This document shows, piece by piece, positions 3,377-55,774 of a DNA stretch of 58,477 nucleotides. Below the pieces are notes generated by a model that did not search any database, had not been told where the DNA came from, and was given only the letters and a program-made list of their open reading frames with translations. The stretch's first letter is position 1; each line of letters begins with the position of its first letter. The translations under genes were made by a program, and so were the position numbers. Source of the stretch: Octopus bimaculoides (lineage: Eukaryota); contig NC_069003.1 in assembly GCF_001194135.2 (NCBI RefSeq), positions 31,387,736 to 31,446,212 on the forward strand, read 5' to 3'.

Positions 3377-3548
3377 TTCTGACAGACATCCATTGTTGCT
3401 AATAGCTATAGGACATTTCAGAGCAAATTACCTTGATAGAAATGTCACAGAAACACTGCGAATGTTGGCCCAGGAAGGTGTACATGCAACATATATGCAG
3501 AGCGTCTACCCAACGCTGAGCTCACCAAATCTGTATTCAATTGTAACA
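3377..3548 (+). CDS. Exon 1 in window (PDE1): [57 protein letters not shown]
   Basis: tttag acceptor at 3375-76 (in-frame alternative AG at 3384-85), gtaagt donor at 3549; 172 nt, phase 2 to 0. Confidence 0.88.

Positions 3549-55774: not shown

What the first reader, a model, noticed from the sequence alone, without database searches (positions are those of the whole stretch)
3377..55774. Tandemly duplicated ENPP: a PDE-NUC module runs in frame into a second PDE domain
Seen: exons 1-17 total 2,091 nt (697 codons, phase 2 in and phase 2 out), and exon 18 starts a second PDE domain with no stop between. PDE1 exons are 172/123/70/34/139/109 nt and PDE2 exons 166/111/61/34/115/109 nt, with identical intron phases 2-0-0-1-2-0-1. 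Established: vertebrate ENPP1-3 have one PDE and one NUC domain. Inference: an old intragenic duplication of a phase-symmetric module made a concatenated ENPP. Both window ends are open, so more modules may lie outside it.
Basis: partly seen in the sequence, partly recalled or inferred. Interest (0 to 1): 0.8.

Follow-up and report, generated by a model that had tools for sequence, protein, structure and literature searches.

The report
Multi-module ENPP gene with dead domains
The window holds the first part of one octopod gene in which a complete ENPP-type ecto-phosphodiesterase unit is spliced in frame to a second one; both catalytic domains seen here have lost their zinc-binding residues. 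The same repeated design is already annotated, but apparently undescribed, in scallops, mussels, snails and worms.

Summary
On the + strand, 24 GT-AG exons (66-55774) give one 2,818-nt reading frame without a stop. Exons 1-17 total exactly 2,091 nt, with phase 2 in and out. The first six exons of both phosphodiesterase (PDE) domains have the stated sizes and identical intron phases.

All assembly gaps lie in introns. Transcript contigs bridge seven of the ten with the predicted exon lengths.

Transcript contigs from four runs (three studies) join 43694 to 44702, so this is one gene, not two.

New here:
- An upstream exon (66-196) encodes half of an ENPP1/3-like membrane anchor and a Thr/Pro stalk. 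Module 1 is therefore the first module, and there are no somatomedin B (SMB) domains.
- PDE1 keeps only 2 of the 6 non-nucleophile zinc ligands; its nucleophile is Ser. PDE2 has lost at least 2 ligands. Both are still under purifying selection.
- In Argonauta hians the same locus continues through a second nuclease-like domain (NUC2). It then runs, by an identical in-frame AG|GTAA junction, into a third PDE whose visible catalytic residues are intact.
- Two- and three-module ENPPs are annotated in scallop, zebra mussel, dog whelk, limpet, annelids and a priapulid.

The architecture is not unique, but no paper describing it was found. The octopod version stands out for its two degenerate modules.

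The parts
66..196 (+). Exon 0. It encodes the C-terminal half of the type II membrane anchor (TLLCTAIGVGVGIHV, compare the LGLGLGLGL end of ENPP1/3 anchors) and a Thr/Pro-rich stalk (KPTTTKIPTTTPLK). Phase 2 out.
   Evidence: The 30 nt that precede exon 1 in RNA contigs of 4 runs match window 167-196 exactly and are followed by GTAAGC. A polypyrimidine tract plus CAG precedes position 66.
3377..3548 (+). Exon 1, the start of PDE1 (172 nt). IAIGHFR replaces SxDGFR, so the zinc-binding Asp is Gly. TLSSPN replaces TKTFPN, so the nucleophile Thr is Ser.
   Evidence: RNA contigs in 4 runs cover 3377-3548. Alignment to ENPP3 structure 6f30. Residue table.
9665..9787 (+). Exon 2 of PDE1 (123 nt), GLYPESHG...
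   Evidence: The loose end after 3548 in RNA matches 9665 onward. tblastn.
11118..11187 (+). Exon 3 of PDE1 (70 nt)
   Evidence: Splice sites and frame. The sum of exons 2-6 (475 nt) fits the X4 RNA contig.
11330..11363 (+). Exon 4 of PDE1 (34 nt)
   Evidence: Sum check against RNA.
11934..12072 (+). Exon 5 of PDE1 (139 nt). [10 protein letters not shown] replaces YxEEPDxxGH, so the Zn1 Asp is Val and the Zn1 His is Glu.
17586..17694 (+). Exon 6 of PDE1 (109 nt). The SDHG motif (Zn2 Asp and His) is kept.
19426..19575 (+). Exon 7 of PDE1 (150 nt)
   Evidence: RNA contigs in 3 runs lie exactly on it. The loose ends on both sides match exons 6 and 8.
23834..23963 (+). Exon 8 of PDE1 (130 nt)
   Evidence: The RNA loose end after 19575 equals 23834 onward..
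27604..27661 (+). Exon 9 of PDE1 (58 nt). GSSGYD replaces GxHGxD, so the last Zn1 His is Ser.
   Evidence: Included in the 855-nt sum fixed by RNA.
29436..29523 (+). Exon 10, the end of PDE1 (88 nt)
   Evidence: sum check.
34769..34950 (+). Exon 11, lasso/linker region (182 nt)
   Evidence: sum check.
37921..38130 (+). Exon 12, the start of NUC1 (210 nt)
   Evidence: sum check.
39698..39815 (+). Exon 13 of NUC1 (118 nt, includes GHLF, compare HGFL in ENPP3)
   Evidence: It is the only boundary choice with reasonable splice signals that gives the 855 nt required by the RNA contig.
40963..41031 (+). Exon 14 of NUC1 (69 nt)
   Evidence: sum check.
41794..41911 (+). Exon 15 of NUC1 (118 nt)
   Evidence: RNA contigs in 3 runs.
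42493..42628 (+). Exon 16 of NUC1 (136 nt)
   Evidence: RNA contigs in 3 runs.
43510..43694 (+). Exon 17 (185 nt). It encodes the end of NUC1 (to ...SANLW, about 43632) and then the inter-module linker [20 protein letters not shown] (43633-43694). The donor is AG|GTAAGT and the in-frame TAA at 43696-43698 lies inside the intron.
   Evidence: RNA contigs in 4 runs join it to 44702. Sequence. Linker homology.
44702..44867 (+). Exon 18, the start of PDE2 (166 nt). SLHNFN: the zinc-binding Asp is His. YKSLPN: the nucleophile Thr is Ser.
   Evidence: 84-86% identical to Argonauta.
46223..46333 (+). Exon 19 of PDE2 (111 nt)
   Evidence: RNA contigs join 44867 to 46223.
46897..46957 (+). Exon 20 of PDE2 (61 nt)
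   Evidence: Splice sites and frame, collinear with Argonauta P0001. No RNA check.
47331..47364 (+). Exon 21 of PDE2 (34 nt)
   Evidence: It was the only candidate passing the splice-site, frame and length (25-59 nt) filters of the scan. No RNA check.
50005..50119 (+). Exon 22 of PDE2 (115 nt). [10 protein letters not shown]: the Zn1 Asp is Asn and the His is kept.
55666..55774 (+). Exon 23 of PDE2 (109 nt). SDH(G) is kept. This is the last exon in the window; the rest of the window (55775-58477) is intron.
   Evidence: No credible next exon was found downstream.

Best explanation
The window carries the 5' part of a single gene of an octopod cephalopod. It encodes a type II membrane-anchored protein built from repeated ENPP1/3-like units, each a phosphodiesterase (PDE) domain followed by a nuclease-like (NUC) domain.

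Shown:
- The order is membrane anchor, Thr/Pro stalk, PDE1-NUC1, a short Trp/Cys linker, then PDE2.
- All of it lies in one reading frame and in one spliced transcript.
- There are no somatomedin B domains.

Shown at the sequence level: PDE1 keeps only the Asp-His pair of the six non-nucleophile zinc ligands (Asp to Gly, Asp to Val, His to Glu, His to Ser), and its nucleophile Thr is Ser. PDE2 has the first Asp as His, the nucleophile as Ser and a second Asp as Asn.

Inferred from the established two-zinc mechanism of ENPPs: neither domain can carry out canonical phosphodiester hydrolysis. They survive as folded, glycosylated, selectively constrained pseudo-enzyme modules.

Inferred from Argonauta synteny, transcript length and three-module mollusc homologues:
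- The gene continues beyond the window with NUC2 and a third PDE-NUC module that looks catalytically competent at the residues visible.
- The two dead membrane-proximal modules would then act as a rigid spacer, or as binding or regulatory modules, that hold one active module away from the cell surface.

Origin: tandem intragenic duplication of an intron-containing PDE-NUC unit. It is old enough that the modules are only about 40% identical. Module-by-position grouping in a weakly supported tree suggests, but does not show, that it predates the octopod lineage.
For: One transcript:
- RNA contigs of four runs in three studies cross 43694/44702.
- Genomic contigs do not carry the joined form.
- There is an acceptor, not a first exon, at 44702, and no start codon or signal sequence in the roughly 1-kb intron.
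- Transcript arithmetic confirms the exon chain 1-19.

Anchor: RNA joins 196 to 3377. The N-termini of homologues have the same anchor-plus-stalk layout without SMB domains.

Family: Pfam Phosphodiest, two stretches, E = 2e-106, plus Endonuclease_NS. Module 1 aligns over residues 46-702 to ENPP3 structure 6f30, E = 3e-87.

Lost ligands: read against the seven conserved zinc-site residues listed in PMC8808174.

Constraint: nonsynonymous difference from Argonauta is 0.19-0.27 per site while synonymous sites are saturated. The frame of 2,818 nt has no stop. The model carries 16 N-glycosylation sequons.

Third module in Argonauta:
- The last NUC2 exon ends ...CKNTS + AG|GTAAAT, and the next exon reads in frame as GPTLIFVSLDGFR....
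- That PDE also has PSKTFPNH, EQPDASGH and VADHG intact.
- The annotated 617-aa product starts in frame inside that exon and carries Phosphodiest plus a weak Endonuclease_NS hit.

Transcript length: the 5,828-nt contig extends about 4,080 nt past the first junction, roughly two further modules.

Homologues with 2-3 modules:
- Mizuhopecten yessoensis XP_021341604.1, 2,243 aa.
- Dreissena polymorpha XP_052277761.1, 2,238 aa.
- Nucella lapillus KAL8580376.1.
- Patella caerulea SNE40_011330.
- Helobdella, Owenia and Priapulus.
Against: - NUC2 and any third module are outside the window. For this species their inclusion in the transcript rests on contig length alone, which a long 3' UTR would also explain.
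- Exons 20-23 have no RNA check.
- The seventh ligand of PDE2 is not visible.
- Ser is a working nucleophile in ENPP6, so Thr to Ser alone proves nothing. A non-canonical activity of the degenerate sites cannot be excluded from sequence.
- The tissue of expression is unknown. One deep RNA run showed no expression.
- Domain trees are poorly resolved, and the degenerate modules attract each other. The age of the duplication and the orthology with the Patella and bivalve modules are therefore not established.
- Logan contigs are assemblies. Isoforms such as retention of intron 17, which would stop at the TAA, would not show.
Confidence: 0.85

Rival explanations
1. Two (or three) separate tandem ENPP paralogues lie head to tail. 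The contigs that cross the junction would be read-through or chimeric transcripts, or assembly chimeras.
For: An in-frame TAA follows exon 17 directly (43696-43698). The part of exon 17 after the NUC fold is about as long as a normal ENPP C-terminal tail. The Argonauta annotation splits the locus into several 'genes'.
Against: - Exon 18 begins at a strong acceptor in the matching phase. There is no start codon, signal sequence or anchor exon in the 1-kb gap.
- The junction is found in four runs from three studies.
- The Argonauta gene model P0001 itself crosses the junction.
- The tail of exon 17 is homologous to the pre-PDE linker, not to a C-terminus.
- Independent annotations of scallop, zebra mussel, whelk, limpet and leech give single proteins with 2-3 modules.
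Confidence: 0.04
2. The tandem arrangement is an assembly artefact: scaffolding across gaps placed two copies or alleles of one ENPP gene in series.
For: There are ten N-gaps in 58 kb.
Against: - The two modules are only about 40% identical, so they are not alleles or recent copies.
- No gap lies between exon 15 and exon 18.
- Independent genomic contigs cover 43382-43779, 43985-44442 and 44613-45085.
- RNA contigs and Argonauta synteny give the same order.
Confidence: 0.01
3. The modules in the window are decaying, non-functional remnants: a transcribed pseudogene or dead 5' exons. Only a downstream module would matter.
For: Both PDE domains have lost zinc ligands. They sit on long branches in the trees.
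Against: - There is no stop or frameshift in 2,818 nt over 24 exons, all with intact GT-AG sites.
- Nonsynonymous divergence is far below the saturated synonymous divergence against Argonauta.
- The degenerate motifs themselves are conserved between the two octopods ([15 protein letters not shown]).
- The fold-wide alignment to ENPP3 is retained.
Confidence: 0.05
4. Alongside the long form, retention of intron 17 (or polyadenylation within it) yields a short single-module isoform that ends ...EKACER* at the TAA inside the donor site.
For: The TAA is in frame immediately after exon 17. The same AG|GTAA arrangement recurs at the NUC2 to PDE3 junction of Argonauta. That recurrence could reflect selection for a switchable stop, or simply the donor consensus.
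Against: No contig was seen that runs from exon 17 into the intron in the RNA runs, but contigs drop rare forms. GTAAGT is simply the consensus donor.
Confidence: 0.15

Closest known systems
Vertebrate ENPP1 / ENPP3 (structures 6f30, 6c01, 6wet; review PMC8808174)
   Same: It is a type II membrane anchor followed by a PDE domain, a lasso region and a catalytically inert nuclease-like domain. Module 1 aligns end to end with ENPP3 (E = 3e-87, about 30% identity). The anchor ends with the same Gly-x-Gly-x-Gly pattern.
   Different: There are no SMB domains; a Thr/Pro stalk takes their place. The PDE-NUC unit is repeated in one polypeptide. PDE1 keeps 2 of the 6 non-nucleophile zinc ligands and PDE2 has lost at least 2. 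The Phe next to the nucleophile is replaced by Ser or Leu.
Three-module mollusc ENPPs, annotated as uncharacterized: Mizuhopecten yessoensis LOC110442364 (XP_021341604.1, 2,243 aa), Dreissena polymorpha LOC127876504 (XP_052277761.1, 2,238 aa), Nucella lapillus KAL8580376.1
   Same: The layout is anchor, Ser/Thr-rich stalk and no SMB, followed by PDE-NUC units joined by a short Trp...Cys...Cys linker. The likely full length of the octopod protein (about 2,150-2,250 aa) is an estimate, but it matches.
   Different: In the scallop all three PDE domains keep all seven catalytic residues. In Dreissena only module 2 is partly degenerate (Asp to Glu, His to Leu). In the octopods modules 1 and 2 are both strongly degenerate. 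Orthology module by module is suggested but weakly supported.
Patella caerulea SNE40_011330 (P0009, 1,434 aa, two modules)
   Same: It has an anchor, a Thr-rich stalk (RTTTPITIKTTTAYKP versus KPTTTKIPTTTPLK) and a first module with the same Asp to Gly and His to Ser losses.
   Different: It has two modules, not the probable three. Its second module is fully intact. Overall identity to window module 1 is only 29%, so the shared losses may be convergent.
Argonauta hians Ahia01_001367300 / Ahia01_001367400 (P0001, P0127) and neighbouring partial models
   Same: This is the orthologous locus. It has the same exon order, the same NUC1 to PDE2 junction and the same degenerate PDE2 motifs, with 67% identity across the junction region.
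   Different: It is annotated as at least five partial 'genes' rather than one. In PDE2 it differs at the Zn1 pair (Asp kept, His to Asn).
Other tandem-domain ectoenzymes or enzymes with a dead repeat (from my own knowledge): somatic angiotensin-converting enzyme (two catalytic domains from an internal duplication); receptor tyrosine phosphatases with an active D1 and an inactive D2 domain
   Same: An internal duplication of a whole catalytic unit sits in one membrane protein. In the phosphatases, one copy has degenerated into a regulatory pseudo-enzyme domain.
   Different: These are unrelated folds and chemistry. The comparison is an analogy only; nothing was tested here.

Membership tests
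ENPP1-3 subgroup of the ENPP / NPP family | Phosphodiesterase (alkaline-phosphatase-superfamily) domain, Pfam PF01663 | tested here: met
   E = 2.2e-106, two stretches, the first covering profile positions 1-342 of 342.
ENPP1-3 subgroup of the ENPP / NPP family | C-terminal nuclease-like domain following the PDE domain and lasso loop | tested here: met
   PF01223 E = 5e-7. A continuous alignment through PDE, lasso and NUC of ENPP3 structure 6f30, residues 46-702.
ENPP1-3 subgroup of the ENPP / NPP family | [quoted passage not shown] | tested here: not met
   RNA joins the anchor/stalk exon (66-196) directly to PDE1. No PF01033 hit in the model. The multi-module homologues also show no SMB domain in their N-termini or Pfam scans.
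ENPP1-3 subgroup of the ENPP / NPP family | Seven conserved catalytic-site residues: six zinc ligands plus a Thr/Ser nucleophile (PMC8808174) | tested here: not met
   PDE1 reads G, S, V, E, D, H, S in place of D, T, D, H, D, H, H. PDE2 reads H, S, N, H, D, H, with the seventh position outside the window.
ENPP1-3 subgroup of the ENPP / NPP family | One PDE-NUC unit per polypeptide | tested here: not met
   A second PDE follows NUC1 in frame and in RNA.
ENPP1-3 subgroup of the ENPP / NPP family | Single-pass type II membrane anchor (ENPP1/3) | tested here: inconclusive
   Only the C-terminal half of a hydrophobic segment (TLLCTAIGVGVGIHV) is in the window. The 5' exons lie outside it. Homologues have a full anchor at this place.
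Multi-module protostome ENPPs (database entries only, e.g. XP_021341604.1, XP_052277761.1, SNE40_011330) | Two or more complete PDE-NUC units in one open reading frame | tested here: met
   One complete unit plus the first six exons of a second lie in one frame and one transcript. NUC2 is seen in Argonauta.
Multi-module protostome ENPPs (database entries only, e.g. XP_021341604.1, XP_052277761.1, SNE40_011330) | Units joined by a short Trp...Cys...Cys linker, homologous to the segment before the PDE domain of ENPP1-3 | tested here: met
   [14 protein letters not shown] at 43651-43692, compared by eye with ...WVEEPC...CPAGF in Owenia, Patella, Priapulus and chicken ENPP3.
Multi-module protostome ENPPs (database entries only, e.g. 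XP_021341604.1, XP_052277761.1, SNE40_011330) | Third module, as in bivalves and Nucella | not testable with these tools
   It lies outside the window. It is supported only by the Argonauta locus L002 and by the length of the 5,828-nt transcript contig.

The most novel reading that the evidence does not exclude
Molluscs, and perhaps lophotrochozoans generally, have an undescribed class of 'poly-ENPP' surface proteins. In the octopod lineage the two membrane-proximal PDE-NUC modules have become conserved pseudo-enzymes, and a single distal module stays active. This would make it a natural model of how a repeated ectoenzyme is re-used as a spacer, a nucleotide or ligand sensor, or an allosteric partner for its active copy.
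Probability: 0.4. Interest if true: 0.55.

Novelty: new variant of a known kind. Interest (0 to 1): 0.42.

Why it matters
The ENPP review I read (PMC8808174) treats the family as seven vertebrate members and describes ENPP1-3 as having one catalytic unit each. This locus, with its homologues, shows that protostomes carry membrane proteins with two or three complete ENPP units in series. It also shows that these units can lose catalysis one at a time: none in the scallop, one partly in the zebra mussel, one in the limpet and two in the octopods.

That graded series could be used to ask what a non-catalytic ENPP fold does. It also warns annotators. The Argonauta locus is currently split into at least five partial genes, and such proteins are labelled 'ENPP3' or 'venom phosphodiesterase' regardless of whether the active site exists.

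This is not a new biochemical principle, and no function was tested.

Tried and rejected
- My first exon 13 (39698-39797, 100 nt) gave 2,073 nt for module 1. I rejected it because the RNA contig needs 855 nt between exons 7 and 15.
Exons 20-23 and exon 13 therefore have no direct RNA check.
- The only raw-read RNA run (X24) does not express the gene, so there are no read-level junction counts and no strand information.
- Neighbour-joining domain trees did not resolve when the duplications happened. The degenerate modules cluster together, probably by long-branch attraction. Priapulus and Caenorhabditis modules pair within species, which points to independent duplication or to fused gene models there.
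- I looked for the next PDE2 exon in 55775-58477 by comparison with Argonauta and by splice/frame scanning. None is credible.
- I looked for the seventh zinc ligand of Argonauta PDE2 and did not find it.
- The spliced protein could not be submitted to the representative search, which accepts only exact window sequence. I assumed the same rule applies to the structure tool, so no model was made.
- The other long ORFs of the window have no Pfam match.
- Literature searches for tandem or duplicated ENPP domains, for ENPP pseudo-enzymes in molluscs, and for ENPP in octopus returned nothing relevant.
- The human ENPP1 probe used was written from memory. It served only to locate exons; every conclusion was re-derived from Pfam, PDB and database proteins.
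Full report
**What the window is.** It is AT-rich eukaryotic DNA (35% G+C) with ten N-gaps and many microsatellites. A probe for ENPP, used only as a lead, found ordered + strand hits. They run through a first phosphodiesterase (PDE) domain (3390-34830), a nuclease-like (NUC) domain (38011-43695) and the start of a second PDE domain (44706-55776). The closest public relative found is a gene model of the octopod Argonauta hians (67% identity), so the source is an octopod cephalopod.

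**Checking the observation.** I rebuilt the exons from splice sites, frames and homology.
- The final model has 24 exons from 66 to 55774, all with AG...GT borders. Its reading frame is 2,818 nt long and has no stop. The other two frames of the first, 2,800-nt version held 64 and 72 stops.
- The first six exons of PDE1 are 172/123/70/34/139/109 nt. Those of PDE2 are 166/111/61/34/115/109 nt.
- The phases after successive exons are 2-0-0-1-2-0-1 in both, and the introns fall at corresponding alignment positions.
- Exons 1-17 total 2,091 nt. My first choice for exon 13 gave 2,073. The 5,828-nt transcript contig of run X3 places the end of exon 7 at position 453 and the start of exon 15 at 1309. 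That is 855 nt, which only exon 13 = 39698-39815 satisfies with reasonable signals. That version also restores a conserved GHLF motif.

**The gaps.** All ten lie in introns.
- A 1,999-nt contig of run X4 has exon 1 at 534-705 and exon 7 at 1181-1330. This leaves exactly the 475 nt of exons 2-6.
- The X3 contig gives 855 nt for exons 8-14 and runs without interruption through exons 15-19.
- Hence no exon is hidden in the gaps at 5685, 7695, 9949, 18229, 20599 or 45414. The gap at 1886 is bridged by the RNA join of 196 to 3377.
- For the gaps at 46622, 47893 and 55133 I have only collinearity with the Argonauta protein.

**Is it one gene?** The donor at 43694 is AG|GTAAGT, and the in-frame TAA at 43696 is part of that donor. 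The acceptor at 44702 is a long pyrimidine run plus CAG. The joined codon is Arg, and the frame continues into [12 protein letters not shown].
- Transcript contigs of four runs from three studies (1,504, 383, 5,828 and 1,208 nt) run through exons 15, 16, 17, 18 and 19.
- Genomic contigs of the same organism are collinear with the window across both intron borders.
- The Argonauta gene model P0001 crosses the same junction (...[22 protein letters not shown]). Its locus has the same order: end of PDE1, NUC1, PDE2, start of NUC2.

**What lies upstream.** In all four RNA runs the 30 nt before exon 1 are identical. They match window 167-196, which is followed by GTAAGC. The exon (66-196) reads TLLCTAIGVGVGIHVSGKTHKRAEVLNQTKPTTTKIPTTTPLK.
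- This is the second half of a hydrophobic anchor with the Gly-x-Gly pattern that ends ENPP1/3 anchors. A Thr/Pro stalk follows it.
- Homologues have the full version: a cytoplasmic tail, the anchor and a Ser/Thr-rich stalk, without somatomedin B domains.
- Module 1 is thus the first module, and about 400 nt of 5' mRNA lie outside the window.

**What the domains look like.** Pfam finds Phosphodiest twice (E = 2e-106) and Endonuclease_NS. Module 1 aligns over residues 46-702 with ENPP3 structure 6f30 (E = 3e-87). The review PMC8808174 states that two zinc ions are held by seven highly conserved residues, including the nucleophile (Thr, or Ser in ENPP6).
- In PDE1 these positions read Gly, Ser, Val, Glu, Asp, His, Ser instead of Asp, Thr, Asp, His, Asp, His, His.
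- In PDE2 the six visible positions read His, Ser, Asn, His, Asp, His.
- Argonauta PDE2 has the same His and Ser, and loses the other member of the Zn1 pair.
- From the established mechanism I infer that neither domain performs canonical hydrolysis.
- They are not decaying, however. Against Argonauta, nonsynonymous differences are 0.19-0.27 per site while synonymous sites are saturated, and the degenerate motifs themselves are conserved.

**What lies downstream.** The window ends in the intron after PDE2 exon 6. I used the third protein search to reach the next Argonauta stretch.
- In that stretch, NUC2 ends ...SLWEGGERASSWRKSAFCKKIDYSQCKNTS followed by AG|GTAAAT. The next exon starts, after ttttag, in the matching phase with GPTLIFVSLDGFRASY...
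- It continues with [24 protein letters not shown] and VADHG. This is a third PDE with all visible catalytic residues intact.
- The annotated 617-aa product there begins in frame inside the NUC2 exon and carries Phosphodiest and Endonuclease_NS hits.
- In the window's own species the 5,828-nt contig extends about 4,080 nt beyond the first junction, about the length of two more modules. This is suggestive, not proof.

**How common is this?** Searching with the model brought up proteins with two full ENPP units: two transcript-derived proteins of 1,571 and 1,542 aa, Patella caerulea, Owenia, Batillaria, Mytilus, Priapulus and a Caenorhabditis.
- An exhaustive profile search, followed by a look-up of names, added three-unit proteins: Mizuhopecten XP_021341604.1 (2,243 aa), Dreissena XP_052277761.1 (2,238 aa) and Nucella KAL8580376.1.
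- It also added two-unit proteins in Helobdella and others.
- All units are intact in the scallop. Dreissena module 2 has two changes. Patella module 1 is degenerate, with the same Asp to Gly and His to Ser as octopod module 1.
- The units are joined by a Trp...Cys...Cys linker that matches the segment just before the PDE domain of vertebrate ENPP3. In the window this linker is the last 20 codons of exon 17. The repeat boundary is therefore inside exon 17, not at its donor.
- A full-module tree groups modules by position in molluscs, but with weak support. The degenerate modules attract each other. I therefore do not date the duplication beyond 'old': the two modules are 38-42% identical.

**Literature.** Searches for duplicated or tandem ENPP domains, for ENPP pseudo-enzymes in molluscs and for ENPP in octopus found nothing on this architecture. 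The library is incomplete, so this is absence of evidence only.

**Verdict.** The gene is one member of a widespread, annotated but apparently undescribed group of multi-unit ENPPs. Its particular feature is that the two units nearest the membrane are conserved pseudo-enzymes, probably followed by one active unit. Interest is moderate.

Noticed in passing
L001 27815-28018 (Argonauta hians), compare L001 20458-20691: A second copy of the last NUC1 exon (...[55 protein letters not shown]) lies on the + strand inside an intron of PDE2. It is either a local duplication or an assembly artefact.
   Followed up: no
window 18520-18667, 40060-40104, 44551-44616, 45274-45412, 58213-58245; many places in L001: A short interspersed repeat recurs in introns of both octopods (conceptual translations [13 protein letters not shown] and [15 protein letters not shown]). 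RNA and DNA runs show depths in the thousands there, so it is a high-copy element shared across octopods.
   Followed up: no
window 1213-1315, 10012-10143, 12608-12687, 37239-37333, 41553-41600; L001 27182-27314: A second repeat family ([18 protein letters not shown]...[10 protein letters not shown] in translation) is also shared between the window and Argonauta introns.
   Followed up: no
window 17993-18133 (+): An open stretch in intron 6 ([46 protein letters not shown]) recalls, from memory, the C-terminal end of mariner/Tc1-type transposases. It gave no Pfam hit.
   Followed up: partly
window 43696-43698 and L002 about 16346-16351: Both inter-module junctions (NUC1 to PDE2 here, NUC2 to PDE3 in Argonauta) have a donor AG|GTAA whose TAA is in frame. 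Retention of the intron would end the protein exactly after a module. This may be only the donor consensus, or it may be a way to make shorter isoforms.
   Followed up: no
L001 and L002 (Argonauta hians contig BAAFZT010000137.1, 16901774-16952726): The Argonauta annotation cuts what looks like one multi-module ENPP gene into at least five partial same-strand gene models (223, 137, 344, 232 and 617 aa).
   Followed up: partly
P0018 (Priapulus), P0025 and P0144 (Caenorhabditis spp.): In Priapulus and in Caenorhabditis sp. 36 (P0025) the two ENPP units of one protein are each other's closest relatives (95-100% bootstrap). This points to independent duplications or to fused tandem-gene models, unlike the mollusc pattern. 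P0144 (C. auriculariae) also has two units but was not put in the tree.
   Followed up: partly
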